Shown here one piece after another: positions 28,533 through 64,000 of a stretch of 64,000 bases of DNA. The notes under the pieces are model-generated. The model searched no databases. It was not told where the DNA came from and was given only the letters and a program-made list of their open reading frames with translations. Every line of letters starts with the position of its first letter. Position 1 is the first letter of the stretch. The position numbers were made by a program, and so were the translations under genes. Source of the stretch: Mobula hypostoma (taxonomy: Eukaryota); contig NC_086120.1 of assembly GCF_963921235.1 (NCBI RefSeq), positions 9,114,001 through 9,178,000 on the forward strand, given 5' to 3'.

Positions 28533-31500
28533 TGTAATTCTCGCTTCGGCAAGCGGCTTAATATAGGGGTGATAGACCCCTGCCCGGCCAAATTTAAGAA
28601 ATCTCGTTTGAGTGGATGCTGCGGGATGTGTCCACTGTTACAAATCAGTACCCCGAAATAACAAACAGTATACAATATGCGATTAAACAATTAAGCTTCA
28701 TAATTCCTACTTTGACAAGAGGGTTAGGAAATAAAACGAAAAAAAGAAACGTGCCCATTCTTATGAAACAGTCTATTGCGCAATGTTGGAGCTCACTGAT
28801 AAGCCGGTCGTCTACCATCGACCTCCTCCGATCGTCGCTGCCCTTCAGACCCTCGCTCCAAGTCCACTCCGTCCGGTGGTCCACCAACTCCATCCATTCG
28901 GGTCTACTCTCCTCATCTCTCCCCGGCAAAAGACCGCCAAAATCTCTCTTCCAGACTCACAAGAACAAACAGCATGCCAAACACCGTTATCTCCAGTCAT
29001 AACCCAAACATTGCTTCTACAGAAAAATCATTACATTATCAGTGAAACCTTACAGCATGTTACACAGCAGTGAAACCCTACAGCATGTCACACTCTCCCC
29101 GCCAAATTTAGTCATGTCCTCGTGACGTTGATATAATTCGCCAACCCTTCTTGCAAAACACAAAGCCCAATCCAGGTGTAAAAGGCAGTGATAAAGCTCC
29201 CCAAAACAGTAGGGGTCACACTCTGTTCTCCTGGTGCTGCGTAGGCCAACTTATCCGGTGGTCTCCTAATTCTCTGAGACCTCCGCGCCCCATCATCTAA
29301 CTCCTCAGGTTCTGACACTACTGGGGATGCTTCCAGTCTACCTGGCGAGGCCTCCCCGGGTCTATCACTCCAGCCCACCTGCAACTCGGAGCCCTCTGTC
29401 CCGTGATCAAACCCTGCTTCCTCCCCTGCAGAGTCCCGCTGCAACATCGGCTGTCCACAGATCGCCCTTCCCCATTCCCTCCTTCCCCGAACACGTCACC
29501 TGTCTCAGTGGGAGAAGTGTTGGGAGTCTCTTCCTCAATCAATGGGGAGTTAGCGAAAGGCAGCATATGCCACACATCCAGGTCCTCATCCTCCGAATTG
29601 GTATCCCTGTCAGGGGTGGGAGTCCGGCCTAACCTCGCCTGTTGAGGGCCCGGTAGTCACCCCGCGTTTCCGCAGAGTCCTCGTACTAGGTGTAGGCTCC
29701 AAGTCGGGCTCTTGGTCTACCTGCACCTCTTGACCCAGGGACAACAGGTGGTTCTGGTGGAGAATCTTGATAGGCCCATTCCCATCCTTTGGTTTCACCC
29801 GAAAAACTGGTAGGTTTGGCTTCTGACTCTCCACCACATGGGGCGTAGCCGCCCAGCGGTCAGCCAACTTATGCTTTCCAGGTAGCCCCAAATTCCTTAT
29901 GAGGACTCTGTCTCTCGACCGCGACCCCAGCTAATTCATAAGCCCTTTTCAACTCTCTTCTTATGTCAGACACATACTTCAGATAAGTCTTCGGTGGTAA
30001 GTCACCCTCGTCAGTCCCAAAACAAAGGTCGTTGGGCAACCTTGCCTCACGTCCGAACATCAGATTATATGGCGAGTACACAGTATCTTCATTTCGTGTA
30101 CAATTATAACTGTGAACCAGATGCCCAATATGTTGACTCCGCCTGTTTTTCTTGCAGATCTCCAGTGTCCCGAGCATGTCAAGCAAGGTCGGATTTAACC
30201 TCTCTGGCTGGGGATCACCCTGTTGGTGATTGGGCGTGGTCCTCGAACGCGACTCCAAGTATGCCCAGTAACTCACGGATTAGTCTGCTCTCGAAATCCC
30301 GTCCCTGATCACGATGCATTCGCCTGGGAAAGCTATAATAAACGAGATACTTCTCCCATAACATTTTTCCCACCGTAGACGCCCTCTAGTCCTTGGTAGG
30401 AAATGTCACAATGGGGTGCTGGGAACAGACCCAAATGCAAGACACAGACACTGAAATACAAGGAACAGGACATGACTAGAGTAGGGACGTGACAGGATTC
30501 AGACCAGGATCAGGGACAAGAGCACAGACTTGGGCTAGGGAAAGCGGGACCAGGACTAGAAACCATGGAATAGGAGACAAGGCTTCGACTCCGAGCCCGA
30601 GACTGGACAAGGACCCAGAACCTGGGCCTTGCCTCGGGCTCGGACCCCAGAACCAGGCAAGGACATGACATGGCTTCAGGACAGGACGTGGCTGGGGTCT
30701 GAAGGCCTGAGCTCGGAGACAGGCCGGGGCCCTTGCTCTTGAGCTTGGTTGCAGGCTGGGGTCTTGGGTCTTGAGCTTGGCTTGGGATCCTCGAGGTTTG
30801 GGTTCTTGGAGATTGGCTGCGGGATTGTCGAAGCTTGGGTTCTTGGAGTTCAGCGACAGACTGGGAACCGAACATCAACATAGAGCCGGGACTTATCCTT
30901 CGACAAGCCGGGACTCATCTGTAACACGACACTGACATGAGACAGGACAGAACATAGACATAGAGCGGGGACTTATCCTAACACAAGCCGGGACTCAACT
31001 TCATCTCCACACCAAGGTGGGAAAGGTCCCTCCTTCAGGTAACAGAACAACGGCCGGACTTACCCAACAGAGGCGAGGACAAGACAAGACAAGACAGGAC
31101 CCTGCGCAGGGCAACGGCAGAACGGCCTGACTTACCCCACGGATGCGAGGACAAGACAAGACAGATCCCCCCGCAAGGCAACGGAAAAACAGCCTGGCTT
31201 ACCCCACGGAAACGAGGACAAGAAGAGACTAAAGAACGACAGACAATTCCATCTCTGCTCCGGGGAAGCTCCGAGTCTCAGTTCAGCCAGGAACCTCAGC
31301 TGGCTAAGGAAACAGCTGGATCCCTACCTAGCTCGGAGTGGCTGGCAACCACTCAGCTGGCCCAGGAAACAACCGAATGCATACCGCAAACACTATTCCA
31401 ACGAGTGGCAACAAGGCTCCATGAAGCGGTGGTCCTCCAACTAGGTCTAGAGATCATGAAAGGTTTCACTAGTCTTCCATCAGCAGGTTGCTCGAAAGGG

Positions 31501-34500
31501 GACTGACAAGACAAACCAGAAGCCCACACTCAACCCCAAGGCTACTTATATTGAAAGCCCCAAGATGGGAATCAGATGTCTATGCTTAACTCAATCAAAC
31601 GAGGGACAGCTGGAAGACCCGGAGTCCTGAGTCCACGGACCGGACCGTGAACAGGAATGAGGACTTCACGGACCAGACCATGATAGGAAAAGCCAGAGTA
31701 TATCTGGTGTTGTGGTCCGTGATTACCAAGACATTCGCCGTGTTGCTGGCATCAGGTTTTATTGACAGGAAACCCATACACACCAGGTCCAGAGGCCCCG
31801 CATTCTGCAGGTGGGACAGGAGAGCTGCCCGCGTAGGCAGTGTATTCCGCCGTATGCATCGAATGCATGACTTGCAGTCTTCTTCGACCTCCGACTTCAT
31901 TCGGGGCCAGTAAAACCGGTCTCTGAGTGATCCATAGGTCTTTCCCACCCCCAAATGTCCAGAATCATCATGAAGTGACTTCACCGCCATCCTCCAATAC
32001 TTCTCGGGCAGAACCAGCTGGCAACGCCGGGGTCGGTCTGGGGGTGACGTGACCCGGTATAGGATCTGGATCTTCAACTCCAACCGAGGCCATTCTCGTA
32101 GTAATGGAGGCACCGACGCGTGTTTCGTCCTCTCCGCCTGAGCCATGTCTCTCTTTTCGACCGCCGCCTAATTGGTACCAATGCCCGGATCATCTCGCTG
32201 AGCAGCAGCCACTTCCCCAGAACTCAATTCCGGCCGCTGATCTGTCTTCAGAACAGTCAGGTTACAATAAACTTGGGGTGGCGTCATCAGAAGCCCCCAA
32301 TTGATCCACCGCTCGCTCTTGCCCCTCCTTTTCCTCTGCCTTCACGGTGATGGCAAAGTGCACAGGGCCTTCACCCCCAGGGCAGGGACGCTCTCTCACT
32401 CCTCGGTCCTGACCACTCCCTCGTCCGCCCGTCGGGACAAAGCATCATCATCGACGTTCCTGCTTCCCGGCCGGTACTTCAGGCTGAAATCATAGGCAGA
32501 CATCCTCGCCAACCACCGATGGGTGTGGCATCCAGTTTCGCCGAGGTCAGGATATAAGTTAGGGGGTTGTTGTCCGTCCTCACCTCAAACTTGGCCCCGT
32601 AGAGGTCGTCACTCAGCTTATCCACCACCGCCATTTCAACGCCAGAAATTCCAACTTGTGCGTGGGATAGTTTTTCTCGGAGGGCGACAGACTCCGTCTG
32701 ACAAACGTCACAGGCCACAACCCGGAGCCCTGACCCTGATACACGACGCCCCCAGACCCTCTCGTCTGGCAAAATTTCTAGTACATACGGTAATCGAGGG
32801 TCCGCAAAAGCCAGAACTGGCGCCTGGGTCAGCAGCTCCTTCAGCGACTGAAGGCCTCCTCACATTTTGCATCCCACCTCGGTCCAAAGGGCTCTGACGG
32901 GCTATGATAGTCTCCACCCTCTTGTCCATTTTTCCCCTCTTTTTCCTCCCCAAGGGAGGGTAACTGCACAGAAGCTGATTGAAAGGGTGTCTCACTTTCA
33001 CGTAGCCTTCCACAAACCCCTGATAGTAACCACAGAACCTGAGGAACGAGCGCAGAGTGCTGACAGTCTGGGGTTTCGCCAATTGGTAATCGCCTCGATC
33101 TTAGCTGGGTCTAAACTACCCCATTCCGTGAGACTATGTGCCCAACGTAGCTAAACAGACGTTTGGCAGAACTGGCACTTGCCAAGTGAAAGCTTTAATG
33201 CTTCAGCTTTCAGACGGCCCAGCACCTTCAGCAGCCTCGCTTAATGTTTTTCCAAGGTGGATTCAAATACTATGAGGTCATTCAGAGATACCACTACCTC
33301 AAGCAAGTTCATATCCCCCACCGTCTTCTCCATGACCCACTGGAAGGTTGCAGGAGCTCCCGAAATGCCCTGGGGCATCCTTCCGAACTGGCAAAATCCC
33401 GGAGGAAATATAAATGCCGTTTTTCCTTTGTCGGCCTCACTCATGGAGATCTGGAAATATCCACTCCTCAAGTCCAGCACAGTGAACCACTTCACACCAC
33501 TCAGGCAGACCAGCGCGTCTTCAATCCTCGGGACAGTATCCTGGTCAGGGATGGTGCGCCTGTTCAGAGTCCTATAGTTTACACACATCCGTACCTTCCC
33601 ATTCATCTTCTGGGGACGCATCGGGGCTTCGGGACTCGGTGGTGATCCCAGCTTCATTCAACTTACACAAATGCTGCCGAATGTCCTCCAGCTGTGCAGG
33701 GGCCAGCCGCCGCGACCTTTCTCTGAACGGGGTATCCTCAGTCACCTGGATAGTGTGACGCGTGCTCTTGGAACAACCCACATCAAACTCGTCAGTGGAA
33801 AATACACCTTCCAGCTTAAACGCCTTCTCTACCAACCTCCTCTTCCAATCCGCAGGAACCCGGGAGTTCCCGAAGTTGAATGACTCAGCCGTCAACGTTC
33901 CCCCCTTTTCCAATAGTTTCTCTGCGGCGTGACTCACAGGGGCACTAGACAATACCATCACTGCAAACAAATGCACCAGGGGCATCCCCCGCTTGAAGGT
34001 CACCTCCGTCTTCGTAGAGTTCCTGACAATCACTGCCATCCTGCTTGCCTGTACAACCGAGGGCTTCTGCGATTCGGGCCTCACTAGTACCCCAGCAGGA
34101 AATCCTGACTCCCGCTCGTGGTCTTCCGGTGTGTCCACTGAGAGGGCACTCCTGGAAATTTGGGGGTCCCCATCACTCTCGTCACTTCCCCGGGCCGTAC
34201 TACCATTGGCATCGACTGGGTGAACCACACAGTCCCTCGTCTAAATTCGATATCCGGCCTGATGCAGCAACGCACTTCCTCAAAAGCAGTTCGAAACACC
34301 GGGTGCACGGACAATGTTCCCAGAAAGCTCTCGCCAGCCTTCTCCTTGCAGGCCCTCATGAGCCTCTTCACAAGAGGGGTGTTGGTCCCCACCAGAATTG
34401 AAACGCCGCCCTTCTCAATGTGGTCCGGACAAACCAGCACCAATGTATCAAGGACCTCAGACACTCCCATATCGGCTTGCGAGAACTCCAACTTGACTGA

Positions 34501-34670
34501 CAAATTACCGTCGTATGGATAATCACTAGCACTAAGCCCACAGATCTCCAGTGCCCTGAATAGTGTCAATGGTAAATGCTTCAGGTACCGGTTGTAAAAC
34601 GAACGGTGCAATAGCGTGACCTGTGACCCGGTGTCGAGTATGGTTTTAGCATAAATACCCTCTATTCGTA
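28533..34670 (-). mobile_element. Element B: second Ty3/Gypsy, degenerate pol (PR-RT-RH-IN) + 3' LTR, inserted in the RT of element A
   Basis: LTR 28533-29092 (TG..CA) with PPT GGCGGGGAGAG at 29093-29103. Protease ILDTGSQVT (~34615-34645); RT LDLRSGY..KTAF..RMPQG..SLND; integrase HDDSGHLG..C..C and PERLNPTLLDML. No gag visible. Confidence 0.9.
30404..31685. mobile_element. Element C: 1282-bp solo LTR in the integrase of element B, with 5-bp TSD
   Basis: Starts TGTCACA, ends CATGATA (decayed GTGACA-type end). GGAAA at 30399-30403 and 31686-31690; removal restores integrase LAFPTKD. Confidence 0.88.
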
Positions 34671-37600
34671 GCTTGGCTGCGGGATCATCGAGGCTAGGGT
34701 ACGGAGCTTGGCTGCGGGATCATCGAGGCTGGGGTACGGAGCTTGGCTGCGGGATCATCAAAGCTAGGGTACGGAGCTTGGCTGCGGGATCATCGAGGCT
34801 GGGGTACGGAGCTTGGCTGCGGGATCATCGAGGCTGGGGTACGGAGCTTGGCTGCGGGATCATCGAGGCTGGGGTACGGAGCTTGGCTGCGGGATCATCG
34901 AGGCTGGGGTACGGAGCTTGGCTGCGGGATCATCGAGGTTGGGGTAATTGGAGCTTCGCTGCGGGATCATCGAGGCTGGGATACGGAGCTTGGCTGCGGG
35001 ATCATCGAGGCTGGCGTACGGAGCTTGGCTGCGGGATCATGGAGGCTGGGGTACGGAGCTTGGCTGCGGGATCATCGAGGCTGGGGTACGGAGCTTGGCT
35101 GCGGGATCATCGGGGCTGGGGTACGGAGCTTGGCTGCGGGATCATCGAGGCTGGTGTACGGAGCTTGGCTGCGGCATCACCGAGGCTGGGGTACGGAGCT
35201 TGGCTGCGGGATCATCGAGGCTGGGGTACGGAGCTTGGCTACGGAATCACCGAGGCTGGGGTACGGAGCTTGGCTGCGGGATCATCGAGGCTGGGGTACT
35301 TGGAGATTAGCTGCGGGATCATCGAGGCTGGGGTACGGAGCTTGGCTGCGGGATCATGGAGGCTGGGGTACGGAGCTTGGCTGCGGGATCATCGAGGCTG
35401 GGGTTCTTGGAGCTTGGCTGCGGAATCATCGAGGCTGGGGTACTTGGAGCTCGGCTGCGGGGTTTTCGAGGCTTGGAGCTTGGCTGCGGGATCTTCAAGC
35501 CTGGGTTCTTGGAGCTTGGCTGCGGGATCTTCAAGCTTGGGTTCTTGGAGCTCGGCTGCGGGGTCTTCGAGGCTTGGAGCTTGGCTGCGGGATCTTCAAG
35601 CTTGGGTTCTTGGAGCTTGGCTGCGGGATCATCGAGGCTGGGGTACGGAGCTTGGCTGCGGGATCATCGAGGCTGGGGTACGGAGCTTGGCTGCGGGATC
35701 ATCGAGGCTGGGGTACGGAGCTTGGCTGCGGGATCATCGAGGCTGGGGTACGGAGCTTGGCTGCGGGATCATCGAGGCTGGGGTACTGAGCTTGGCTGCG
35801 GGATCATCGAGGCTGGGGTACGGAGCTTGGCTGCGGGATCATCGAGGCTGGGGTACGGAGCTTGGCTGCGGGATCATCGAGGCTGGGGTACTTGGAGCTT
35901 GGCTGCGGGATCATCGAGGCTGGGGTACTTGGATCTTGGCTACGGGATCATCGAGGCTGGGGGACTTGGAGCTTCGCTGCGGGATCATCGAGGCTGGGGT
36001 ACGGAGCTTGGCTGCGGTATCATCGAGGCTGGGGTACTTGGAGCTTCGCTACGGGATCATCGAGGCTGGGGTACGGAGCTTCGCTGAGGGATCATCGAGG
36101 CTGGGGTACGGAGCTTGGCTGCGGGATCATCGAGGCTGGGGTACTGAGCTTGGCTGCGCGATCATCGAGGCTGGGGTACGGAGCTTGGCTGCGGGATCAT
36201 CGAGGCTGCGGTACTGAGCTTGGCTGCGGGATCATCGAGGCTAGGGTACAGAGCTTGACTGCGGGATCATCGAGGCTGGGGTACGGAGCTTGGCTGCGGG
36301 ATCATCGAGGCTGGGGTACGGAGCTTGGCTGCGGGATCATCGAGGCTGGGGTACGGAGCTTGGCTGCGGGTTCATCGAGGCTGGGGTACGGAGCTTGGCT
36401 GCGGGATCATCGAGGCTGGGGTAATTGGAGCTTCGCTGCGGGATCATCGAGGCTGGGGTACGGAGCTTGGCTGCGGGATCATCGAGGCTGGGGTACGGAG
36501 CTTGGCTGCGGGATCATCGAGGCTGGGGTACGGAGCTTGGCTGCGGGATCATCGAGGCTGGGGTACGGAGCTTGGCAGCGGGATCATCGAGGCTGGGGTA
36601 CTTGGATCTTCGCTGCGGGATCATCGAGGCTGGGGTACTTGGAGCTTGGCTGCGGGATCATCGAGGCTGGGGTACGGAGCTTGGCTGCAGGATCATCGAG
36701 GCTGCGGTACTGAGCTTGGCTGCGGGATCATCGAGGCTGGGGTACGGAGCTTGGCTGCGGGATCATCGAGGCTGGGGTACGGAGCTTGGCTGCGGGATCA
36801 TCGAGGCTGGGGTACGGAGCTTGGCTGCGGGATCATCGAGGCTGGGGTACGGAGCTTAGCTGCGGGATCATCGAGGCTGGGGTACGGAGCTTGGCTGCGG
36901 GATCATCGAGGCTGGGGTACTTGGAGCTTCGCTGCGGGATCATCGAGGCTGGGGTACGGAGCTTGGCTGCGGGATCATCGAGGCTGGGGTACTGAGCTTG
37001 GCTGCGGGATCATCGAGACTAGGGTACGGAGCTTGGCTGCGGGATCATCGAGGCTGGGGTACGGAGCTTGGCTGCGGAATCATCGAGGCTGGGGTACGGA
37101 GCTTGGCTGCGGGATCATCGAGGCTGGGGTACGGAGCTTGGCTGCGGGATCATCGAGGCTGGGGTACGGAGCTTGGCTGCGGGATCATCGAGGCTGCGGT
37201 ACGGAGCTTGGCTGCGGGATCATCGATGCTGGGGTACTCAGCTTGGCTGCGGGATCATCGAGGCTGGGGTACGGAGCTTAGCTACGGGATCATCGAGGCT
37301 GGGGTACGGAGCTTGGCTGCGGGATCATCGAGGCTGGGGTACGGAGCTTGGCTGCGGGATCATCGAGGCTGGAGTACGGAGCTTGGCTGCGGGATCATCG
37401 AGGCTGGGGTACTGAGCTTGGCTGCGGGATCATCGAGGCTGGGGTAATGAGCTTGGCTGCGGGATCATCGAGGCTGGGGTACGGAGCTTGGCTGCGGGAT
37501 CATCGAGGCTGGGGTACGGAGCTTGGCTGCGGGATCATCGCGGCTGGGGTACTTGGAGCTTGGCTGCGGGATCATCGAGGCTGGGGTACTTGGATCTTGG

Positions 37601-40600
37601 CTAAGGGATCATCGAGGCTGGGGTACTTGGAGCTTGGCTGCGGGATCATCGAGGCTGGGGTACTTGGATCTTGGCCACGGCATCATCGAGGCTGGGGTAC
37701 TTGGAGCTTCGCTGCGGGATCATCGAGGCTCGGGTACGGAGCTTGGCTGCGGGATCATCGAGGCTGGGGTACTTAGAGCTTCGCTACGGGATCATCGAGG
37801 CTGGGGTACGGAGCTTCGCTGAGGGATCATCGAGGCTGGGGTACGGAGCTTGGCTGCGGGATCATCGAGGCTGGGGTACTGAACTTGGCTGCGGGATCAT
37901 CGAGGCTGGGGTACGGAGCTTGGCTGCGGGATCATCGAGGCTGGGGTACGGAGCTTGGCTGCGGGATCATCGTGGCTGGGGTACGGAGCTTGGCTGCGGG
38001 ATCATCGAGGCTGGGGTACGGAGCTTGGCTGCGGAATCATCGAGGCTGGGGTACGGAGCTTGGCTGCGGGATCATCGAGGCTGGGGTACGGAGCTTGGCT
38101 GCGGGATCATCGAGGCTGGGGTACGGAGCTTGGCTGCGGGATCATCGAGGCTGGGGTACGGAGCTTGGCTGCGGGATCATCGAGGCTGGGGTACGGAGCT
38201 TGGCTGCGGGATCATCGAGGCTGGGGTACGGAGCTTGGCGCGGGATCATCGAGGCTGGGGTACTTGGAGCTTCGCTGCGGGATCATCGAGGCTGGGGTAC
38301 TTGGAGCTTGGCTGCGGGATCATCGTGGCTGGGGTACGGAGCTTGGCTGCGGGATCATCGAGGCTGGGGTACGGAGCTTGGCTGCGGAATCATCGAGGCT
38401 GGGGTACGGAGCTTGGCTGCGGGATCATCGAGGCTGGGGTACGGAGCTTGGCTGCGGGATCATCGAGGCTGGGGTACGGAGCTTGGCTGCGGGATCATCG
38501 AGGCTGGGGTACGGAGCTTGGCTGCGGGATCATCGAGGCTGGGGTACGGAGCTTGGCTGCGGGATCATCGAGGCTGGGGTACGGAGCTTGGCGCGGGATC
38601 ATCGAGGCTGGGGTACTTGGAGCTTCGCTGCGGGATCATCGAGGCTGGGGTACTTGGAGCTTGGCTGCGGGATCATCGAGGCTGGGGTACGGAGCTTGGC
38701 TGCGGAATCATCGAGGCTGGGGTACGGAGCTTGGCTGCGGGATCATCGAGGCTAGGGTACTTGGAGCTTCGCTGCGGGATCATCGAGGCTGGGGTACTTG
38801 GAGCTTGGCTGCGGGATCATCGAGGCTGGGGTACGGAGCTTGGCTGCGGGATCATCGAGGCTGGGGTACTCAGCTTGGCTGCGGGATCATCGAGGCTGGG
38901 GTACGGAGCTTGGCTGCGGGATCATCGAGGCTGGGGTACGGAGCTTGGCTGCCGTATCATCGAGGCTGGGGTACGGAGCTTGTCTGCGGGATCATCGAGG
39001 CTGGGGTACGGAGCTTGGCTGCGGGATCATCGAGGCTGGGGTACGGAGCTTGGCTGCGGGATCATCGAGGCTGGGGTACGGAGCTTGGCTGCGGGATCAT
39101 CGAGGCTGGGGTACTAAGCTTGGCTGCGGGATCATCGAGGCTGGGGTACGGAGCTTGGCTGCGGGATCATCGAGGCTGGGGTACGGAGCTTGGCTGCGGG
39201 ATCATCGAGGCTGGGATACGGAGCTTGGCTGCGGGATCATCGAGGCTGGGGTACTTGGATCTTGGCTGCGGGATCATCGAGGCTTTGGTACTTGGATCTT
39301 GGCTACGGGATCATCGAGGCTGGGGTACTTGGTGCTTCGCTGCGGGATCATCGAGGCTGGGGTACGGAGCTTGGCTGCGGGATCATCGAGGCTGGGGTAC
39401 TTGGAGCTTCGCTACGGGATCATCGAGGCTGGGGTACGGAGCTTCGCTGAGGGATCATCGAGGCTGGGGTACGGAGCTTGGCTGCGGAATCATCGAGGCT
39501 GGGGTACTGAGCTTGGCTGCGGGATCATCGAGGCTGGGGTACGGAACTTGGCTGCGGGATCATCGAGGCTGGGGTACGGAGCTTGGCTGCGGGATCGTCG
39601 AGGCTGGGGTACGGAGCTTGGCTGCGGGATCATCGAGGCTGGGGTGCAGAGCTTGGCTGCGGTATCATCGAGGCTGGGGTACGGAGCTTGGCTGCGGGAT
39701 CATCGAGGCTGGGGTACGGAGCTTGGCTGCGGGATCATCGAGGCTGGGGTACGGAGCTTGGCTGCGGGATCATCGAGGCTGGGGTACGGAGCTTGGCTGC
39801 GGGATCATCGAGGCTAGGGTACGGAGCTTGGCTGCGGGATCATCGAGGCTTGGGTACGGAGCTTAGCTGCGGGATCATCGAGGCTGGGGTACGGAGCTTG
39901 GCTGCGGTATCATCGAGGCTGGGATACGGAGCTTGGCTGCGGGATCATCGAGGCTGGGGTTCTTGGACCTTAGCTGCGGAATCATCGAGGCTGGGGTACT
40001 TGGAGCTCGGCTGCGGGGTTTTCGAGGCTTGGAGCTTGGCTGCGGGATCTTCAAGCCTGGGTTCTTGGAGCTTGGCTGCGGGATCTTCAAGCTTGGGTTC
40101 TTGGAGCTCGGCTGCGGGGTCTTCGAGGCTTGGAGCTTGGCTGCGGGATCTTCAAGCTTGGGTTCTTGGAGCTTGGCTGCGGGATCATGGAGGCTGGGGT
40201 ACGGAGCTTGGCTGTGGGATCATCGAGGCTGGGGAACGGAGCTTGGCTGCGGGATCATCGAGGCTGGGGTACGGAGCTTGGCTGCGGGATCATCGAGGCT
40301 GCGGTACTGAGCTTGGCTGCGGGATCATCGAGGCTGGGGTACGGAGCTTGGCTGCGGGATCATCGAGGCTGGGGTACGGAGCTTGGCTGCGGGATCATCT
40401 AGGCTGGGGTACGGAGCTTGGCTGCGGGATCATCGAGGCTGGGGTACGGAACTTGGCTGCCGGATCACCGAGGCTGGGGTACGGAGCTTGGCTGTGGGAT
40501 CATCGAGGCTGGGGTACTTGGAGTTTGGCTGCGGGATCATCGAGGCTGGGGTACGGGGCTTGGCTGCGGGATCATCGAGGCTGGGGTACGGAGCTTGGCT

Positions 40601-43600
40601 GCGGGATCATCGAGGCTGGGGTTCTTGGAGCTTGGCTGCGGAATCATCGAGGCTGGGATACGGAGCTTGGCTGCGGGATCATCGAGGCTGGGGTTCTTGG
40701 AGCTTGGCTGCGGAATCATCGAGGCTGGGGTACTTGGAGCTCGGCTGCGGGGTTTTCGAGGCTTGGAGCTTGGCTGCGGGATCTTCAAGCTTGGGTTCTT
40801 GGAGCTTGGCTGCGGGATCTTCAAGCTTGGGTTCTTGGAGCTCGGCTGCGGGGTCTTCGAGGCTTGGAGCTTGGCTGCGGGATCTTCAAGCTTGGGTTCT
40901 TGGAGCTTGGCTGCGGGATCATCGAGGCTGGGGTACGGAGCTTGGCTGCGGGATCATCGAGGCTGGGGTACGGAGCTTGGCTGCGGGATCATCGTGGCTG
41001 GGGTACGGAGCTTGGCTGCGGGATCATCGAGGCTGGGGTACTGAGCTTGGCTGCGGGATCATCGAGGCTGGGGTACGGAGCTTGGCTGCGTGATCATCGA
41101 GGCTGGGGTACGGAGCTTGGCTGCGGGATCATCGAGGCTGGGGTACGGAGCTTGGCTGCGGGATCATCGAGGCTGGGGTACTTGGAGCTTCGCTACGGGA
41201 TCATCGAGGCTGGGGTACGGAGCTTCGCTGAGGGATCATCGAGGCTGGGGTACTGAGCTTGGCTGCGGGATCATCGAGGCTGGGGTACGGAGCTTGGCTG
41301 CGGGATCATCGAGGCTGCGGTCCTGAGCTTGGTTGCGTGATCATCGAGGCTAGGGTACGGAGCTTGGCTGCGGGATCATCGAGGCTGGGGTACGGAGCTT
41401 GGCTGCGGGATCATCGAGGCTGGGGTACGGAGCTTGGCTGCGGGATCATCGAGGCTGGGGTACGGAGCTTGGCTGCGGGATCATCCAGGCTGGGGTACGG
41501 AGCTTGGCTGCGGGATCATCGAGGCTGGGGTACGGAGCTTGGCTGCGGGATCATCGAGGCTGGGGTACGGAGCTTGGCTGCGGAATCATCGAGGCTGGGG
41601 TACGGAGCTTGGCTGCGGGATCATCGAGGCTAGGGTACTTGGAGCTTCGCTGCGGGATCATCGAGGCTGGGGTACTTGGAGCTTGGCTGCGGGATCATCG
41701 AGGCTGGGGTACGGAGCTTGGCTGCGGGATCATCGAGGCTGGGGTACTCAGCTTGGCTGCGGGATCATCGAGGCTGGGGTACGGAGCTTGGCTGCGGGAT
41801 CATCGAGGCTGGGGTACGGAGCTTGGCTGCCGTATCATCGAGGCTGGGGTACGGAGCTTGGCTGCGGGATCATCGAGGCTGGGGTACGGAGCTTGGCTGC
41901 GGGATCATCGAGGCTGGGGTACGGAGCTTGGCTGCGGGATCATCGAGGCTGGGGTACGGAGCTTGGCTGCGGGATCATCGAGGCTGGGGTACTAAGCTTG
42001 GCTGCGGGATCATCGAGGCTGGGGTACGGAGCTTGGCTGCGGGATCATCGAGGCTGGGGTACGGAGCTTGGCTGCGGGATCATCGAGGCTGGGATACGGA
42101 GCTTGGCTGCGGGATCATCGAGGCTGGGGTACTTGGATCTTGGCTGCGGGATCATCGAGGCTTTGGTACTTGGATCTTGGCTACGGGATCATCGAGGCTG
42201 GGGTACTTGGAGCTTCGCTGCGGGAACATCGAGGCTGGGGTACGGAGCTTGGCTGCGGGATCATCGAGGCTGGGGTACTTGGAGCTTCGCTACGGGATCA
42301 TCGAGGCTGGGGTACGGAGCTTCGCTGAGGGATGATCGAGGCTGGGGTACGGAGCTTGGCTGCGGGATCATCGAGGCTGGGGTACTGAGCTTGGCTGCGG
42401 GATCATCGAGGCTGGGGTACGGAACTTGGCTGCGGGATCATCGAGGCTGGGGTACGGAGCTTGGCTGCGGGATCATCGAGGCTGGGGTACGGAGCTTGGC
42501 TGCGGGATCATCGAGGCTGGGGTGCAGAGCTTGGCTGCGGTATCATCGAGGCTGGGGTACGGAGCTTGGCTGCGGGATCATCGAGGCTGGGGTACGGAGC
42601 TTGGCTGCGGGATCATCGAGGCTGGGGTACGGAGCTTGGCTGCGGGATCATCGAGGCTGGGGTACGGAGCCTGGCTGCGGGATCATCGAGGCTAGGGTAC
42701 GGAGCTTGGCTGCGGGATCATCGAGGCTTGGGTACGGAGCTTAGCTGCGGGATCATCGAGGCTGGGGTACGGAGCTTGGCTGCGGTATCATCGAGGCTGG
42801 GATACGGAGCTTGGCTGCGGGATCATCGAGGCTGGGGTTCTTGGAGCTTAGCTGCGGAATCATCGAGGCTGGGGTACTTGGAGCTCGGCTGCGGTGTTTT
42901 CGAGGCTTGGAGCTTGGCTGCGGGATCTTCAAGCCTGGGTTCTTGGAGCTTGGCTGCGGGATCTTCAAGCTTGGGTTCTTGGAGCTCGGCTGCGGGGTCT
43001 TCGAGGCTTGGAGCTTGGCTGCGGGATCTTCAAGCTTGGGTTCTTGGAGCTTGGCTGCGGGATCATGGAGGCTGGGGTACGGAGCTTGGCTGTGGGATCA
43101 TCGAGGCTGGGGAACGTAGCTTGGCTGCGGGATCATCGAGGCTGGGGTACGGAGCTTGGCTGCGGGATCATCGAGGCTGCGGTACTGAGCTTGGCTGCGG
43201 GATCATCGAGGCTGGGGTACGGAGCTTGGCTGCGGGATCATCGAGTCTGGGGTACGGAGCTTGGCTGCGGGATCATCGAGGCTGGGGTACGGAGCTTGGC
43301 TGCGGGATCATCGAGGCTGGGGTACTTGGAGCTTGGCTACGGGATCATCGAGGCTGGGGGACTTGGAGCTTCGCTGCGGGATCATCGAGGCTGGGGTACG
43401 GAGCTTGGCTGCGGGATCATCGAGGCTTGGGTACTTGGAGCTTCGCTACTGGATCATCGAGGCTGGGGTACGGAGCTTCGCTGAGGGATCATCGAGGCTG
43501 GGGTACGGAGCTTGGCTGCGGGATCATCGAGGCTGGGGTACTGAGCTTGGCTGCGGGATCATCGAGGCTGGGTTACGGACCTTGGCTGCGGGATCATCGA

Positions 43601-45846
43601 GGCTGGGGTACTGAGCTTGGCTGCGGGATCATCGAGGCTAGGGTACGGAGCTTGGCTGCGGGATCATCGAGGCTGGGGTACGGAGCTTGGCTGCGGGATC
43701 ATCGAGGCTGGGGTACGGAGCTTGGCTGCGGGATCGTCGAGGCTGGGGTACTTGGAGCTTCGCTGCGGGATCATCGAGGCTGGGGTACGGAGCTTGGCTG
43801 CGGGATCATCGAGGCTGGGGTACGGAGCTTGGCTGCGGGATCATCGAGGCTGGGGTACGGAGCTTGGCTGCGGGATCATCGAGGCTGGGGTACGGAGCTT
43901 GGCTGCGGGATCATCGAGGCTGGGGTACGGAGCTTGGCTGCGGGATCATCGAGGCTGGGGTACTTGGAGCTTCGCTGCGGGATCATCGAGGCTGGGGTAC
44001 TTGGAGCTTGGCTGCGGGATCATCGAGGCTGGGGTACGGAGCTTGGCTGCGGGATCATCGAGGCTGGGGTACTGAGCTTGGCTGCGGGATCATCGAGGCT
44101 GGGGTACGGAGCTTGGCTGCGGGATCATCGAGGCTGGGGTACGGAGCTTGGCTGCGGGATCATCGAGGCTGGGGTGCAGAGCTTGGCTGCGGTATCATCG
44201 AGGCTGGGGTACGGAGCTTGGCTGCGGGATCATCGAGGCTGGGGTACGGAGCTTGGCTGCGGGATCATCGAGGCTGGGGTACGGAGCTTGGCTGCGGGAT
44301 CATCGAGGCTGGGGTACGGAGCTTGGCTGCGGGATCATCGAGGCTAGGGTACGGAGCTTGGCTGCGGGATCATCGAGGCTTGGGTACGGAGCTTGGCTGC
44401 GGGATCATCGAGGCTGGGGTACGGAGCTTGGCTGCGGTATCATCGAGGCTGGGATACGGAGCTTGGCTGCGGGATCATCGAGGCTGGGGTTCTTGGAGCT
44501 TAGCTGCGGAATCATCGAGGCTGGGGTACTTGGAGCTCGGCTGCGGGGTTTTCGAGGCTTGGAGCTTGGCTGCGGGATCTTCAAGCCTGGGTTCTTGGAG
44601 CTTGGCTGCGGGATCTTCAAGCTTGGGTTCTTGGAGCTCGGCTGCGGGGTCTTCGAGGCTTGGAGCTTGGCTGCGGGATCTTCAAGCTTGGGTTCTTGGA
44701 GCTTGGCTGCGGGATCATGGAGGCTGGGGTACGGAGCTTGGCTGTGGGATCATCGATGCTGGGGAACGGAGCTTGGCTGCGGGATCATCGAGGCTGGGGT
44801 ACGGAGCTTGGCTGCGGGATCATCGAGGCTGCGGTACTGAGCTTGGCTGCGGGATCATCGAGGCTGGGGTACGGAGCTTGGCTGCGGGATCATCGAGGCT
44901 GGGGTACGGAGCTTGGCTGCGGGATCATCTAGGCTGGGGTACGGAGCTTGGCTGCGGGATCATCGAGGCTGGGGTACGGAACTTGGCTGCCGGATCACCG
45001 AGGCTGGGGTACGGAGCTTGGCTGTGGGATCATCGAGGCTGGGGTACTTGGAGTTTGGCTGCGGGATCATCGAGGCTGGGGTACGGGGCTTGGCTGCGGG
45101 ATCATCGAGGCTGGGGTACGGAGCTTGGCTGCGGGATCATCGAGGCTGGGGTTCTTGGAGCTTGGCTGCGGAATCATCGAGGCTGGGATACGGAGCTTGG
45201 CTGCGGGATCATCGAGGCTGGGGTTCTTCGAGCTTGGCTGCGGAATCATCGAGGCTGGGGTACTTGGAGCTCGGCTGCGGGGTTTTCGAGGCTTGGAGCT
45301 TGGCTGCGGGATCTTCAAGCTTGGGTTCTTGGAGCTTGGCTGCGGGATCTTCAAGCTTGGGTTCTTGGAGCTCGGCTGCGGGGTCTTCGAGGCTTGGAGC
45401 TTGGCTGCGGGATCTTCAAGCTTGGGTTCTTGGAGCTTGGCTGCGGGATCATCGAGGCTGGGGTACGGAGCTTGGCTGCGGGATCATCGAGGCTGGGGTA
45501 CGGAGCTTGGCTGCGGGATCATCGTGGCTGGGGTACGGAGCTTGGCTGCGGGATCATCGAGGCTGGGGTACTGAGCTTGGCTGCGGGATCATCGAGGCTG
45601 GGGTACGGAGCTTGGCTGCGTGATCATCGAGGCTGGGGTACGGAGCTTGGCTGCGGGATCATCGAGGCTGGGGTACGGAGCTTGGCTGCGGGATCATCGA
45701 GGCTGGGGTACTTGGAGCTTCGCTACGGGATCATCGAGGCTGGGGTACGGAGCTTGGCTGCGGGATCATCGAGGCTGGGGTACTGAGCTTGGCTGCGGGA
45801 TCATCGAGGCTGGGGTACGGAGCTTGGCTGCGGGATCATCGAGGCT
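34671..45846 (+). repeat. Tandem array of a 35-bp unit GGAGCTTGGCTGCGGGATCATCGAGGCTGGGGTAC with 36/37-bp variants, ~315 units, ending at gap 2
   Basis: Read directly. The unit has 16 G, 7 C, 7 T, 5 A and 3 CpG. Measured length 11176 bp. Confidence 0.99.
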
Positions 45847-46269
45847 NNNNNNNNNNNNNNNNNNNNNNNNNNNNNNNNNNNNNNNNNNNNNNNNNNNNNN
45901 NNNNNNNNNNNNNNNNNNNNNNNNNNNNNNNNNNNNNNNNNNNNNNNNNNNNNNNNNNNNNNNNNNNNNNNNNNNNNNNNNNNNNNNNNNNNNNNNNNNN
46001 NNNNNNNNNNNNNNNNNNNNNNNNNNNNNNNNNNNNNNNNNNNNNNNNNNNNNNNNNNNNNNNNNNNNNNNNNNNNNNNNNNNNNNNNNNNNNNNNNNNN
46101 NNNNNNNNNNNNNNNNNNNNNNNNNNNNNNNNNNNNNNNNNNNNNNNNNNNNNNNNNNNNNNNNNNNNNNNNNNNNNNNNNNNNNNNNNNNNNNNNNNNN
46201 NNNNNNNNNNNNNNNNNNNNNNNNNNNNNNNNNNNNNNNNNNNNNNNNNNNNNNNNNNNNNNNNNNNNN
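45847..46269. other. Assembly gap 2 (423 N)
   Basis: Run of N. Confidence 1.
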
Positions 46270-53516: not shown

Positions 53517-56500
53517 TGTAATTCTCGCTTCGGCAAGCGGCTTAATATAGGGGTGATAGACCCCTGCCCGGCCAAATTTAAGAAATCTCGTTTGAGTGGA
53601 TGCTGCGGGATGTGTCCACTGTTACAAATCAGTACCCCGAAATAACAAACAGTATACAATATGCGATTAAACAATTAAGCTTCATAATTCCTACTTTGAC
53701 AAGAGGGTTAGGAAATAAAACGAAAAAAAGAAACGTGCCCATTCTTATGAAACAGTCTATTGCGCAATGTTGGAGCTCACTGATAAGCCGGTCGTCTACC
53801 ATCGACCTCCTCCGATCGTCGCTGCCCTTCAGACCCTCGCTCCAAGTCCACTCCGTCCGGTGGTCCACCAACTCCATCCATTCGGGTCTACTCTCCTCAT
53901 CTCTCCCCGGCAAAAGACCGCCAAAATCTCTCTTCCAGACTCACAAGAACAAACAGCATGCCAAACACCGTTATCTCCAGTCATAACCCAAACATTGCTT
54001 CTACAGAAAAATCATTACATTATCAGTGAAACCTTACAGCATGTTACACAGCAGTGAAACCCTACAGCATGTCACACTCTCCCCGCCAAATTTAGTCATG
54101 TCCTCGTGACGTTGATATAATTCGCCAACCCTTCTTGCAAAACACAAAGCCCAATCCAGGTGTAAAAGGCAGTGATAAAGCTCCCCAAAACAGTAGGGGT
54201 CACACTCTGTTCTCCTGGTGCTGCGTAGGCCAACTTATCCGGTGGTCTCCTAATTCTCTGAGACCTCCGCGCCCCATCATCTAACTCCTCAGGTTCTGAC
54301 ACTACTGGGGATGCTTCCAGTCTACCTGGCGAGGCCTCCCCGGGTCTATCACTCCAGCCCACCTGCAACTCGGAGCCCTCTGTCCCGTGATCAAACCCTG
54401 CTTCCTCCCCTGCAGAGTCCCGCTGCAACATCGGCTGTCCACAGATCGCCCTTCCCCATTCCCTCCTTCCCCGAACACGTCACCTGTCTCAGTGGGAGAA
54501 GTGTTGGGAGTCTCTTCCTCAATCAATGGGGAGTTAGCGAAAGGCAGCATATGCCACACATCCAGGTCCTCATCCTCCGAATTGGTATCCCTGTCAGGGG
54601 TGGGAGTCCGGCCTAACCTCGCCTGTTGAGGGCCCGGTAGTCACCCCGCGTTTCCGCAGAGTCCTCGTACTAGGTGTAGGCTCCAAGTCGGGCTCTTGGT
54701 CTACCTGCACCTCTTGACCCAGGGACAACAGGTGGTTCTGGTGGAGAATCTTGATAGGCCCATTCCCATCCTTTGGTTTCACCCGAAAAACTGGTAGGTT
54801 TGGCTTCTGACTCTCCACCACATGGGGCGTAGCCGCCCAGCGGTCAGCCAACTTATGCTTTCCAGGTAGCCCCAAATTCCTTATGAGGACTCTGTCTCTC
54901 GACCGCGACCCCAGCTAATTCATAAGCCCTTTTCAACTCTCTTCTTATGTCAGACACATACTTCAGATAAGTCTTCGGTGGTAAGTCACCCTCGTCAGTC
55001 CCAAAACAAAGGTCGTTGGGCAACCTTGCCTCACGTCCGAACATCAGATTATATGGCGAGTACACAGTATCTTCATTTCGTGTACAATTATAACTGTGAA
55101 CCAGATGCCCAATATGTTGACTCCGCCTGTTTTTCTTGCAGATCTCCAGTGTCCCGAGCATGTCAAGCAAGGTCGGATTTAACCTCTCTGGCTGGGGATC
55201 ACCCTGTTGGTGATTGGGCGTGGTCCTCGAACGCGACTCCAAGTATGCCCAGTAACTCACGGATTAGTCTGCTCTCGAAATCCCGTCCCTGATCACGATG
55301 CATTCGCCTGGGAAAGCTATAATAAACGAGATACTTCTCCCATAACATTTTTCCCACCGTAGACGCCCTCTAGTCCTTGGTAGGAAATGTCACAATGGGG
55401 TGCTGGGAACAGACCCAAATGCAAGACACAGACACTGAAATACAAGGAACAGGACATGACTAGAGTAGGGACGTGACAGGATTCAGACCAGGATCAGGGA
55501 CAAGAGCACAGACTTGGGCTAGGGAAAGCGGGACCAGGACTAGAAACCATGGAATAGGAGACAAGGCTTCGACTCCGAGCCCGAGACTGGACAAGGACCC
55601 AGAACCTGGGCCTTGCCTCGGGCTCGGACCCCAGAACCAGGCAAGGACATGACATGGCTTCAGGACAGGACGTGGCTGGGGTCTGAAGGCCTGAGCTCGG
55701 AGACAGGCCGGGGCCCTTGCTCTTGAGCTTGGTTGCAGGCTGGGGTCTTGGGTCTTGAGCTTGGCTTGGGATCCTCGAGGTTTGGGTTCTTGGAGATTGG
55801 CTGCGGGATTGTCGAAGCTTGGGTTCTTGGAGTTCAGCGACAGACTGGGAACCGAACATCAACATAGAGCCGGGACTTATCCTTCGACAAGCCGGGACTC
55901 ATCTGTAACACGACACTGACATGAGACAGGACAGAACATAGACATAGAGCGGGGACTTATCCTAACACAAGCCGGGACTCAACTTCATCTCCACACCAAG
56001 GTGGGAAAGGTCCCTCCTTCAGGTAACAGAACAACGGCCGGACTTACCCAACAGAGGCGAGGACAAGACAAGACAAGACAGGACCCTGCGCAGGGCAACG
56101 GCAGAACGGCCTGACTTACCCCACGGATGCGAGGACAAGACAAGACAGATCCCCCCGCAAGGCAACGGAAAAACAGCCTGGCTTACCCCACGGAAACGAG
56201 GACAAGAAGAGACTAAAGAACGACAGACAATTCCATCTCTGCTCCGGGGAAGCTCCGAGTCTCAGTTCAGCCAGGAACCTCAGCTGGCTAAGGAAACAGC
56301 TGGATCCCTACCTAGCTCGGAGTGGCTGGCAACCACTCAGCTGGCCCAGGAAACAACCGAATGCATACCGCAAACACTATTCCAACGAGTGGCAACAAGG
56401 CTCCATGAAGCGGTGGTCCTCCAACTAGGTCTAGAGATCATGAAAGGTTTCACTAGTCTTCCATCAGCAGGTTGCTCGAAAGGGGACTGACAAGACAAAC

Positions 56501-59500: not shown

Positions 59501-59654
59501 GGATAATCACTAGCACTAAGCCCACAGATCTCCAGTGCCCTGAATAGTGTCAATGGTAAATGCTTCAGGTACCGGTTGTAAAACGAACGGTGCAATAGCG
59601 TGACCTGTGACCCGGTGTCGAGTATGGTTTTAGCATAAATACCCTCTATTCGTA
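53517..59654 (-). mobile_element. Element B, Gypsy pol + 3' LTR (copy 2)
   Basis: Duplicate at +24984; LTR 53517-54076. Confidence 0.9.
55388..56669. mobile_element. Element C solo LTR (copy 2)
   Basis: Duplicate with the GGAAA TSD on both sides. Confidence 0.88.
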
Positions 59655-62600: not shown

Positions 62601-64000
62601 GAGGCTCGGGTACGGAGCTTGGCTGCGGGATCATCGAGGCTGGGGTACTTAGAGCTTCGCTACGGGATCATCGAGGCTGGGGTACGGAGCTTCGCTGCGG
62701 GATCATCGAGGCTGGGGTACGGAGCTTGGCTGCGGGATCATCGAGGCTGGGGTACTGAACTTGGCTGCGGGATCATCGAGGCTGGGGTACGGAGCTTGGC
62801 TGCGGGATCATCGAGGCTGGGGTACGGAGCTTGGCTGCGGGATCATCGTGGCTGGGGTACGGAGCTTGGCTGCGGGATCATCGAGGCTGGGGTACGGAGC
62901 TTGGCTGCGGAATCATCGAGGCTGGGGTACGGAGCTTGGCTGCGGGATCATCGAGGCTGGGGTACGGAGCTTGGCTGCGGGATCATCGAGGCTGGGGTAC
63001 GGAGCTTGGCTGCGGGATCATCGAGGCTGGGGTACGGAGCTTGGCTGCGGGATCATCGAGGCTGGGGTACGGAGCTTGGCTGCGGGATCATCGAGGCTGG
63101 GGTACGGAGCTTGGCTGCGGGATCATCGAGGCTGGGGTACTTGGAGCTTCGCTGCGGGATCATCGAGGCTGGGGTACTTGGAGCTTGGCTGCGGGATCAT
63201 CGAGGCTGGGGTACGGAGCTTGGCTGCGGGATCATCGAGGCTGGGGTACGGAGCTTGGCTGCGGAATCATCGAGGCTGGGGTACGGAGCTTGGCTGCGGG
63301 ATCATCGAGGCTGGGGTACGGAGCTTGGCTGCGGGATCATCGAGGCTGGGGTACGGAGCTTGGCTGCGGGATCATCGAGGCTGGGGTACGGAGCTTGGCT
63401 GCGGGATCATCGAGGCTGGGGTACGGAGCTTGGCTGCGGGATCATCGAGGCTGGGGTACGGAGCTTGGCTGCGGGATCATCGAGGCTGGGGTACTTGGAG
63501 CTTCGCTGCGGGATCATCGAGGCTGGGGTACTTGGAGCTTGGCTGCGGGATCATCGAGGCTGGGGTACGGAGCTTGGCTGCGGAATCATCGAGGCTGGGG
63601 TACGGAGCTTGGCTGCGGGATCATCGAGGCTAGGGTACTTGGAGCTTCGCTGCGGGATCATCGAGGCTGGGGTACTTGGAGCTTGGCTGCGGGATCATCG
63701 AGGCTGGGGTACGGAGCTTGGCTGCGGGATCATCGAGGCTGGGGTACTCAGCTTGGCTGCGGGATCATCGAGGCTGGGGTACGGAGCTTGGCTGCGGGAT
63801 CATCGAGGCTGGGGTACGGAGCTTGGCTGCCGGATCATCGAGGCTGGGGTACGGAGCTTGGCTGCGGGATCATCGAGGCTGGGGTACGGAGCTTGGCTGC
63901 GGGATCATCGAGGCTGGGGTACGGAGCTTGGCTGCGGGATCATCGAGGCTGGGGTACGGAGCTTGGCTGCGGGATCATCGAGGCTGGGGTACTAAGCTTG
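59655..64000 (+). repeat. 35/37-bp tandem array (copy 2), open-ended at the window edge
   Basis: Same junction (tattcgta|gcttggctgc) and same unit. Confidence 0.99.

What the first reader, a model, noticed from the sequence alone, without database searches (positions are those of the whole stretch)
30740..45846. A >11-kb satellite apparently born from a short internal repeat of the neighbouring LTR family
Solo LTR C contains about two degenerate units at ~30770-30848. The unit at 30808-30844 (GGAGATTGGCTGCGGGATTGTCGAAGCTTGGGTTCTT) matches the 37-bp array variant GGAGCTTGGCTGCGGGATCATCGAGGCTGGGGTTCTT at 32/37, in the same orientation. Rare array variants share LTR-specific words: GGAGATT at ~35302, and AAGCTTGGGTTCTT in blocks near 35400-35620, 39950-40190, 40610-40910, 42830-43060, 44480-44710 and 45140-45440. 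These look like ancestral relics inside a homogenised 35-bp array. TE-derived satellites are known in general; here the seed, intermediates and product lie within a few kb, next to an Ig gene.
Basis: partly seen in the sequence, partly recalled or inferred. Interest (0 to 1): 0.8.

Follow-up and report, generated by a model that had tools for sequence, protein, structure and literature searches.

The report
Satellite grown from a mobile element's repeat
An 11-kb block of 35-letter repeats in a stingray genome is a recently amplified descendant of a short 36-37-letter repeat carried by a common LTR-like mobile element, a process already known from plants and other animals, but it did not grow out of the element copy that lies next to it.

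Summary
Every string and coordinate checks out, and the match between the LTR-like element's internal repeat (30708-30850) and the 35-bp array (34670-45846) is far beyond chance.

The origin reading holds for the element family but not for this locus.
- 'LTR C' (30404-31683, 7-bp target duplication) is a high-copy mobile insertion in two ray species. Its repeat varies in unit number between copies.
- The satellite's exact words occur only in one of those species, so the element's repeat is the older of the two.
- The units form a series TTCTTG > TACTTG > TAC--G (37 to 35 bp).

- The neighbouring copy is a self-contained insertion inside a degraded Ty3/Gypsy integrase. It is separated from the array by 3 kb of collinear pol, so it is a sibling and not the seed.
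- The array's left flank is the Gypsy protease.
- The six 'relic' blocks are one 240-bp module re-copied by kb-scale duplications inside the array.

LTR status itself is unproven. The scan found a cleaner in-place case elsewhere in this genome (s1-141961). This is an ordinary new member of a known kind.

The parts
30404..31683 (+). 'LTR C': a 1280-bp LTR-like high-copy mobile insertion, made largely of sub-repeats (32, 36-37, 80, 67-72 and 57 bp). Its strand is taken from the orientation shared with the array; the element's own polarity is not established.
   Evidence: Contig alignments break exactly at 30404 (186-204 contigs) and 31683 (238-259 contigs) with low-agreement flanks (0.33-0.37) in two species. 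An empty-site joint 30396>31684 is seen in all four runs. Termini are TG...GA; there is no AATAAA, tRNA or Rfam match at gathering score.
30397..30403 (.). Left copy of the 7-bp target-site duplication TAGGAAA. The right copy is at 31684-31690.
   Evidence: Direct read. The empty-site joint shows 7 shared letters in three runs and 4 in the fourth.
30690..30850 (+). Internal repeat of the element: 4-5 units of 32-37 bp, only 72-86% alike. The last two units (30773-30845) are closest to the satellite.
   Evidence: Between copies, contigs show 'goes back 36/42' and 'skips 75/79' joints.
31691..34669 (-). Degraded Ty3/Gypsy pol with frameshifts and stops: protease (DTGS motif) next to the array, then RT, RNase H, and the integrase zinc finger with the start of the catalytic core.
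   Evidence: Translations. Pfam RVT_1 at 2.8e-17 and Integrase_H2C2 at 1.1e-17; RT_RNaseH is weak, below Pfam's cut-off.
29613..30396 (-). Continuation of the same Gypsy integrase on the other side of the LTR C insertion.
   Evidence: The reading AFP | TKD*RASTVGKML... resumes across the insertion. Pfam found nothing in these two pieces, so this rests on motifs and collinearity.
34670..45846 (+). Satellite array A. Of 312 monomers, 228 are 35 bp, 50 are 37 bp, 18 are 36 bp and 11 are 29 bp. The modal monomer accounts for 105 of 312. The array is cut off by an N-run.
35378..35617 (+). 240-bp composite module of seven units (37, 37, 29, 36, 36, 29, 36 bp) that holds almost all the LTR-like character states. 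Further copies are at 39934-40173, 40668-40907, 42812-43051, 44464-44703 and 45198-45437.
39470..41316 (+). Internal segmental duplication, equal to 44000-45846 at 99.9% (offset 4530). Two others: 38646-40451 = 41524-43329 (99.6%, offset 2878) and 42347-43328 = 43999-44980 (99.3%, offset 1652).
   Evidence: Fixed-offset identity scan.
55388..56667 (+). Second copy of LTR C, identical in all 1280 bp and with the same target duplication. It belongs to the 25-kb duplicate.
59654..64000 (+). Array B, the duplicate of array A's first 4.3 kb. It runs off the window.

Best explanation
The 35-bp satellite is a young amplification product, specific to the source species, of the variable 36-37-bp tandem repeat carried by a high-copy, roughly 1.3-kb LTR-like mobile element ('LTR C').

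Likely course:
1. Shown: the element family carried a short, old, variable repeat.
2. Inferred: in some copy other than the one seen here, slippage or unequal exchange lengthened the repeat.
3. Inferred from the character series: a 37-bp unit changed TTCTTG to TACTTG and then lost two bases, giving the 35-mer, which then took over the array.
4. Shown: the array was then enlarged by kb-scale internal duplications, which also re-copied one heterogeneous LTR-like 240-bp module six times.
5. Shown: the array was finally duplicated together with about 13 kb of neighbouring DNA, including an Ig light-chain gene, as a 25-kb tandem unit.

The solo copy at 30404-31683 is a sibling of the progenitor, not the seed. 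How the array came to abut a truncated Gypsy protease is unresolved. Possibilities are loss of the progenitor's flanks by deletion, or arrival of an already homogenised array.
For: - Homology is in the same orientation and far beyond chance.
- LTR C is mobile and high-copy. Hundreds of contigs break at exactly 30404 and 31683 with unrelated flanks in organisms A and B, and Gypsy copies without the insertion exist in all four runs laid.
- The motif is a family feature and varies in number. The bin 30715-30877 is well covered in A and B, with joints adding 36 or 42 bp or removing 75-79 bp. Loose-end consensus sequences are further LTR-type units.
- The element's own units are only 72-86% alike, so the repeat is old. 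In the array, 105 of 312 monomers are identical, so the array is young.
- The LTR/Gypsy region is held about equally by runs of A (0.24-0.27) and B (0.21-0.25). The satellite's sampled 31-mers are held only by A runs (0.36-0.47), and no B run reaches a twentieth of them.
- At 34702 and 34737 the summed contig depth is 175,000-527,000 in A and 5,600-8,500 in B. The LTR bins are higher in B than in A.
- Graded series of units: LTR u4, then T37, y37 and c35, at 5, 6 and 8 differences by hand count in corrected phase. One search, computed one base out of phase, gives 6, 7 and 9.
- An earlier follow-up in the same genome describes a roughly 1-kb LTR-like element swollen in place by its own repeat (s1-141961, not checked here).
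Against: - The array is not embedded in LTR C. Its left flank is the Gypsy protease, its edge monomers are already consensus 35-mers, and its right flank is hidden.
- No other copy of the element could be fetched, so no array flanked on both sides by LTR C was seen here.
- The depth figures come from Logan contigs, which the tool says are not copy numbers.
- Organism B is one sample, and its library type is unknown.
- The LTR-to-satellite 'chimeric' joints are ambiguous, because all units cross-align.
- The F36 unit is a side branch rather than a strict intermediate. It is 4 events from both LTR u4 and T37, while u4 and T37 are 5 apart (my hand count on the alignment). Its LTR-like states could therefore come from gene conversion.
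Confidence: 0.7

Rival explanations
1. In-place birth: the array grew directly out of the neighbouring copy at 30404-31683. One route would be a tandem duplication joining Gypsy position 34669 to the element's repeat, followed by expansion.
For: The copy lies only 3.8 kb from the array, in the same orientation. With some hundreds of copies in a genome of several Gb, such closeness is unlikely by chance (my estimate from the contig counts). The array starts in nearly the same unit phase (AGCT...) as the element's repeat.
Against: The element is complete, with an intact 7-bp target duplication. The Gypsy pol between the two is collinear. No LTR C sequence outside the units occurs in or beside the array. 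At most 423 hidden bases remain on the right, while the element's part to the right of the repeat is about 830 bp.
Confidence: 0.07
2. Reverse polarity: an existing satellite was captured by the element family, and LTR C merely carries a sample of it.
For: Mobile elements do pick up tandem repeats. Relatives of the element in organisms C and E have almost no cover of the repeat region, so the module was acquired at some point in the element's history.
Against: The element's units are mutually diverged and of the rare 36-37-bp type, not the dominant 35-mer. Organism B has the element with the motif but not the satellite's words. Copies in two species share the motif.
Confidence: 0.08
3. Common third source: the element's repeat and the satellite both descend from a tandem repeat of another element or locus, without direct descent of one from the other.
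For: The array's flanks give no link to LTR C. The 29-bp and 36-bp units in the 240-bp module carry states (GATCTTC, GAGCTCGG) not present together in this copy's last two units.
Against: Those same states do occur in LTR-borne units. GAGCTCGG is in unit u1 of this copy, and GATCTTCGAGGCTTGG is in a loose-end consensus from organism B. No third sequence with the motif exists in the window.
Confidence: 0.12
4. Chance resemblance of two G-rich repeats.
For: Both are GC-rich with short periods.
Against: Score 28 against a shuffle mean of 8.3 (SD 1.0, maximum 12). There is an 18-base exact word shared with the F36 unit (my reading; one search counts its 14-base core AAGCTTGGGTTCTT). The period is matched and the orientation is the same.
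Confidence: 0.01

Closest known systems
Satellites derived from short tandem arrays inside LTR retrotransposons (Lathyrus sativus Ogre-type elements; Vondrak et al. 2019, PMC7004042)
   Same: A dispersed element carries a short, variable tandem array. Occasional expansion gives long satellite arrays with the same unit. Expansion happens at few loci while the element is spread across the genome.
   Different: In the plant cases the short arrays lie within the retrotransposons. Here the array has no element flank on its visible side, and LTR status of the carrier is unproven. The host is a cartilaginous fish and the unit is short (35-37 bp).
In-place swollen LTR-like element in the same stingray genome (scan note s1-141961, not checked here)
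   Same: Same genome. A roughly 1-kb LTR-like common element whose short internal repeat multiplied about 500-fold to 19.6 kb, which by my arithmetic implies a unit of similar size.
   Different: That array is reported to sit inside its element. This one does not. Whether it is the same element family could not be tested, because searches of the notes by sequence return nothing.
Satellite arrays with kb-scale nested segmental duplications
   Same: Blocks of 1-1.85 kb at 99.3-99.9% identity are repeated at offsets of 1652, 2878 and 4530 bp, and a recurring 240-bp composite module punctuates the array.
   Different: There is no regular higher-order period. The duplications are few, nested and recent rather than a uniform higher-order unit.

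Membership tests
Transposable-element-derived satellite (LTR-borne tandem repeat expanded) | Satellite monomer homologous to a short tandem array inside the element, with the same period and orientation | tested here: met
   Matches of 76-85.5% over 64-117 bp, plus/plus, periods 36-37 against 35-37 bp; score 28 against a shuffle maximum of 12.
Transposable-element-derived satellite (LTR-borne tandem repeat expanded) | Dispersed copies of the element carry the short array, with variable unit number | tested here: met
   Hundreds of contigs with unrelated flanks in two species. Joints add 36 or 42 bp or remove 75-79 bp in the repeat region.
Transposable-element-derived satellite (LTR-borne tandem repeat expanded) | The expanded array is embedded in, or flanked by, element sequence | tested here: not met
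   The left flank is the Gypsy protease. No LTR C sequence beyond the units occurs in or beside the array. The right flank is hidden by the N-run.
Transposable-element-derived satellite (LTR-borne tandem repeat expanded) | The element's repeat predates the satellite | tested here: met
   The element with its motif is present in organisms A and B. The satellite's 31-mers are only in A. Element units are 72-86% alike, whereas 105 of 312 array monomers are identical. This rests on contigs from one sample per species.
Solo LTR of an LTR retrotransposon or endogenous retrovirus | Termini 5'-TG...CA-3' | tested here: not met
   The termini are TGTCAC...CCATGA, that is TG...GA. The boundaries are fixed by contig breaks.
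Solo LTR of an LTR retrotransposon or endogenous retrovirus | Target-site duplication of 4-6 bp | tested here: inconclusive
   Seven identical bases flank the element. One of them could match by chance.
Solo LTR of an LTR retrotransposon or endogenous retrovirus | Paired copies flanking an internal region with a primer-binding site and polypurine tract | not testable with these tools
   There is no second copy in the window apart from the segmental duplicate. Flank consensus agreement of 0.33-0.37 suggests mostly solo copies or a non-LTR element. The host genome itself could not be searched.
Solo LTR of an LTR retrotransposon or endogenous retrovirus | Promoter and polyadenylation signals | tested here: inconclusive
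   One TATATT at 31547; no AATAAA or ATTAAA on either strand.

The most novel reading that the evidence does not exclude
One LTR-like family in this stingray acts as a repeated seeder of satellites. Its short repeat would have expanded independently at several loci: this array, the 55-kb array about 115 kb downstream, and the 19.6-kb and >23-kb arrays noted elsewhere in the genome. This would have happened within one species' lifetime, and the arrays that flank Ig light-chain miniloci would then serve as substrates for unequal exchange that multiplies the Ig clusters.
Probability: 0.12. Interest if true: 0.55.

Novelty: new member of a known kind. Interest (0 to 1): 0.3.

Why it matters
It adds a cartilaginous-fish case to the known route from mobile-element repeats to satellite DNA. 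It has three useful features:
- a polarity argument based on a sister species that has the element but not the satellite;
- a readable series of unit types from 37 bp to 35 bp;
- an internal clock, since two 25-kb copies differ by 0.045% in unique DNA but by 4% in the array.

It also shows that closeness of a 'seed' and an array does not prove in-place birth. None of this changes current understanding.

Tried and rejected
- Protein search with the 123-aa spurious ORF across the element's repeat, hoping to fetch other copies through gene calls. Nothing scored. I ran no further search on the satellite ORF.
- The search of earlier findings by sequence, with the satellite and with the element's right part. 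Both came back blank.
- Rfam and tRNA scans of the element for a SINE-like head or a primer-binding-site partner. Only sub-threshold microRNA-like noise appeared.
- A first BLAST for internal duplications of the array, with strict settings, printed nothing. It was replaced by a fixed-offset identity scan.
- I considered using the LTR-to-satellite joints as proof of intermediates. I rejected them as ambiguous, because all units cross-align at 80%.
- I considered microhomology at the Gypsy/array junction with the element's sequence before its repeat. There is no convincing match.
- I considered that the N-runs are assembly gaps and the 25-kb repeat an artefact. The runs end at positions 2 bp apart in the two copies. 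That fits deliberate masking better, but I cannot tell.
- Literature searches for a described satellite in rays or skates found nothing relevant.
Full report
**1. What is in the sequence**

TRF reports a 35-bp array at 34670-45846 with 317.7 copies and 91% matches. It also reports a 37-bp x2.4 repeat at 30763-30848.

- The string at 30808-30844 matches the 37-bp array variant at 32/37. That variant occurs 8 times.
- GGAGATT occurs once in the array, at 35302.
- AAGCTTGGGTTCTT occurs in the array only in the six listed blocks.

BLAST of the window against itself finds array-like sequence outside the arrays only at 30708-30851 and its duplicate at 55692-55835. The matches are always plus/plus, 76-85.5% identical over 64-117 bp.

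The resemblance is not chance. The best local score of the element against four consensus monomers is 28. For 500 dinucleotide-preserving shuffles the mean is 8.3, SD 1.0 and maximum 12. For 56 other chunks of the window the maximum is 10.

**2. The setting**

On the minus strand, 34669 down to 31691 encodes a degraded Ty3/Gypsy pol. It reads protease with DTGS, then RT, RNase H, and an integrase zinc finger with the start of the catalytic core. There are frameshifts and stops. Pfam gives RVT_1 at 2.8e-17 and Integrase_H2C2 at 1.1e-17.

The integrase reading breaks after ...TLAFP at about 31690. It resumes as TKD*RASTVGKML... at 30396 and below.

The 1280 bp in between (30404-31683) is 'LTR C'. 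It is flanked by TAGGAAA on both sides. So LTR C is a complete insertion nested in the Gypsy integrase.

The array starts at 34670, directly against the Gypsy protease coding sequence. Consensus-type 35-mers run right up to the edge. Nothing of LTR C beyond its repeat units occurs in or next to the array.

The stretch 21289-39017 recurs at 46272-64000. Element and array are therefore each present twice, as part of a roughly 25-kb tandem unit that also holds a germline-joined Ig light-chain V-J (notes s1-142800 and s1-144150).

**3. What LTR C is**

I laid Logan contigs of four runs on 29900-34780 at 80% likeness. The runs were X1 (organism A), X4 (organism B), X9 (organism C) and X14 (organism E).
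- Alignments break exactly at 30404 in 204 contigs of X1 and 186 of X4.
- Alignments break exactly at 31683 in 238 contigs of X1 and 259 of X4.
- The flank consensus agrees only 0.33-0.37, which means many different insertion sites.
- A joint 30396>31684 is present in all four runs. It shares 7 letters in three runs and 4 in X14. These are Gypsy copies without the insertion.

LTR C is therefore a real, high-copy mobile element with the boundaries inferred from the target duplication.

Whether it is an LTR is open:
- The termini are TG...GA, not TG...CA.
- The duplication is 7 bp.
- There is no AATAAA and only one TATATT.
- There is no tRNA and no Rfam match at gathering score.
- The diverse flanks suggest mostly solo copies or a non-LTR element.

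The element is a mosaic of sub-repeats. The satellite-like zone holds 4-5 units of 32-37 bp that are only 72-86% alike.

**4. Polarity**

(a) The motif is a family feature. The bin 30715-30877 is well covered in A and B. Joints 'goes back 36' and 'goes back 42' add a unit. Joints with 29-32 extra letters add about two units. 'Skips 75/79' removes two units. Loose-end consensus sequences at 30773 and 30818 are further LTR-type units.

(b) In organisms C and E the flanking parts of the element are covered, but this bin is nearly empty. Depth there is 225 and 28.5, against 19,519 and 3,059 in the bin to its left. These two runs also show no excess depth over the array's first monomers.

(c) Runs of A and B hold the LTR/Gypsy region about equally, with shares of 0.24-0.27 and 0.21-0.25. 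Only A runs hold the satellite's sampled 31-mers, at 0.36-0.47, and no B run reaches a twentieth. At 34702 and 34737 the summed contig depth is 175,000-527,000 in A against 5,600-8,500 in B, although the LTR bins are higher in B. Depths from contigs are not copy numbers, so I treat this as supporting evidence only.

(d) The element's units are mutually diverged, so the repeat is old. In the array, 105 of 312 monomers are identical, so the array is young.

(e) The units form a graded series. LTR u3 and u4 end ...GGGTTCTTG. The array type T37 ends ...GGGGTTCTTG. The type y37 ends ...GGGGTACTTG. The 35-mer ends ...GGGGTAC--G. Differences from LTR u4, counted by hand in corrected phase, rise from 4 (F36) through 5 (T37) and 6 (y37) to 8 (35-mer). 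One search, computed one base out of phase, gives 5, 6, 7 and 9. In organism B the 'TT put in' form makes up 22-30% of the small satellite-like depth. In A it is about 0.6-2%.

Together these make the element's repeat the ancestor and the 35-mer a derived, recently amplified form.

**5. The 'relics'**

Cutting the array into monomers gives 228 of 35 bp, 50 of 37 bp, 18 of 36 bp and 11 of 29 bp.

Almost all LTR-like states sit in one composite module of exactly 240 bp. Its seven units are 37, 37, 29, 36, 36, 29 and 36 bp long. It starts at 35378, 39934, 40668, 42812, 44464 and 45198.

A fixed-offset scan shows three internal duplications:

| Segment | Equals | Identity |
|---|---|---|
| 39470-41316 | 44000-45846 | 99.9% |
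| 38646-40451 | 41524-43329 | 99.6% |
| 42347-43328 | 43999-44980 | 99.3% |

Four of the six modules are therefore copies made by these events. The evidence from 'relics' is essentially one module, not six independent ones.

By my hand count on the alignment, the 36-bp unit F36 is 4 events from LTR u4 and 4 from T37, while u4 and T37 are 5 apart. F36 is thus a side branch that keeps two LTR states (AAGCTTGGG), not a strict intermediate. Gene conversion from an element copy cannot be excluded.

**6. What is not explained**

The array is not inside an LTR C copy, at least on its visible side, and its edge is already homogenised. So the junction with the Gypsy protease is secondary. Either the progenitor's flanks, together with the Gypsy gag and 5' LTR, were deleted, or a ready-made array arrived here.

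The closeness of a sibling copy 3.8 kb away is unexpected for an element with some hundreds of copies. It keeps an in-place scenario alive at low odds (about 0.07).

**7. Comparison with what is known**

The process is the one described for Lathyrus. There, nine of eleven satellites derive from short tandem arrays within LTR retrotransposons that occasionally expand (PMC7004042).

An earlier follow-up in this same stingray genome (s1-141961) reports a roughly 1-kb LTR-like element swollen in place to 19.6 kb by its own repeat. Other first-stage notes list more such arrays, including a 55-kb one about 115 kb downstream (s1-142801). I could not test whether they belong to the same family.

I found no paper describing this satellite in rays.

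**8. Verdict**

- Observation: confirmed.
- Interpretation: partly supported. The family-level origin is likely (about 0.7). In-place birth from the neighbouring copy is not supported, and 'LTR' is unproven.
- Novelty: a new member of a known kind.
- Interest: modest.

Noticed in passing
21289-34669 vs 46272-59653; 34670-39017 vs 59654-64000: The two copies of the 25-kb unit differ by only 5 mismatches and 1 gap in 13.4 kb of non-satellite DNA (99.955%). They are 96% alike in the array, with about 23 monomer-level replacements or indels in 4.3 kb. Either the array turns over far faster than its flanks, or the two copies are alleles or an assembly duplicate.
   Followed up: partly
21059-21288 and 45847-46269: The two N-runs differ in length (230 and 423 bases) and end 2 bp apart relative to the homologous sequence that follows. 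They look like deliberate masks rather than contig ends. If so, array A ends within 423 bp of 45846. Not filled.
   Followed up: no
30396/31684 (empty site): Gypsy copies without the LTR C insertion are seen in contigs of all four species laid. This Ty3/Gypsy family is therefore shared widely among these rays and is older than the LTR C insertion.
   Followed up: partly
30650-30880: Relatives of LTR C in organisms C and E are covered on both sides but almost not at all over the repeat zone. Loose ends at 30587 and 30648 lead into different sequence. The repeat module seems to be an acquisition of the element lineage shared by organisms A and B.
   Followed up: no
26645-28557 minus strand: A second, better preserved retroelement pol lies here. 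It includes a 357-aa stop-free stretch with an integrase zinc finger and catalytic core, preceded by the RT end and RNase H. It is part of the stack of mobile elements between the Ig gene and the Gypsy element.
   Followed up: no
22230-22580 plus strand: The translation reads as an Ig V domain running without a break into a J-like FGRGTKLFVTG. This agrees with the germline-joined light-chain note s1-142800.
   Followed up: partly
34673-36217 plus strand: The array carries stop-free ORFs of up to 514 aa. These follow from the repeat having no stop in that frame. They are not evidence of a gene, but they could be mis-called by gene finders.
   Followed up: no
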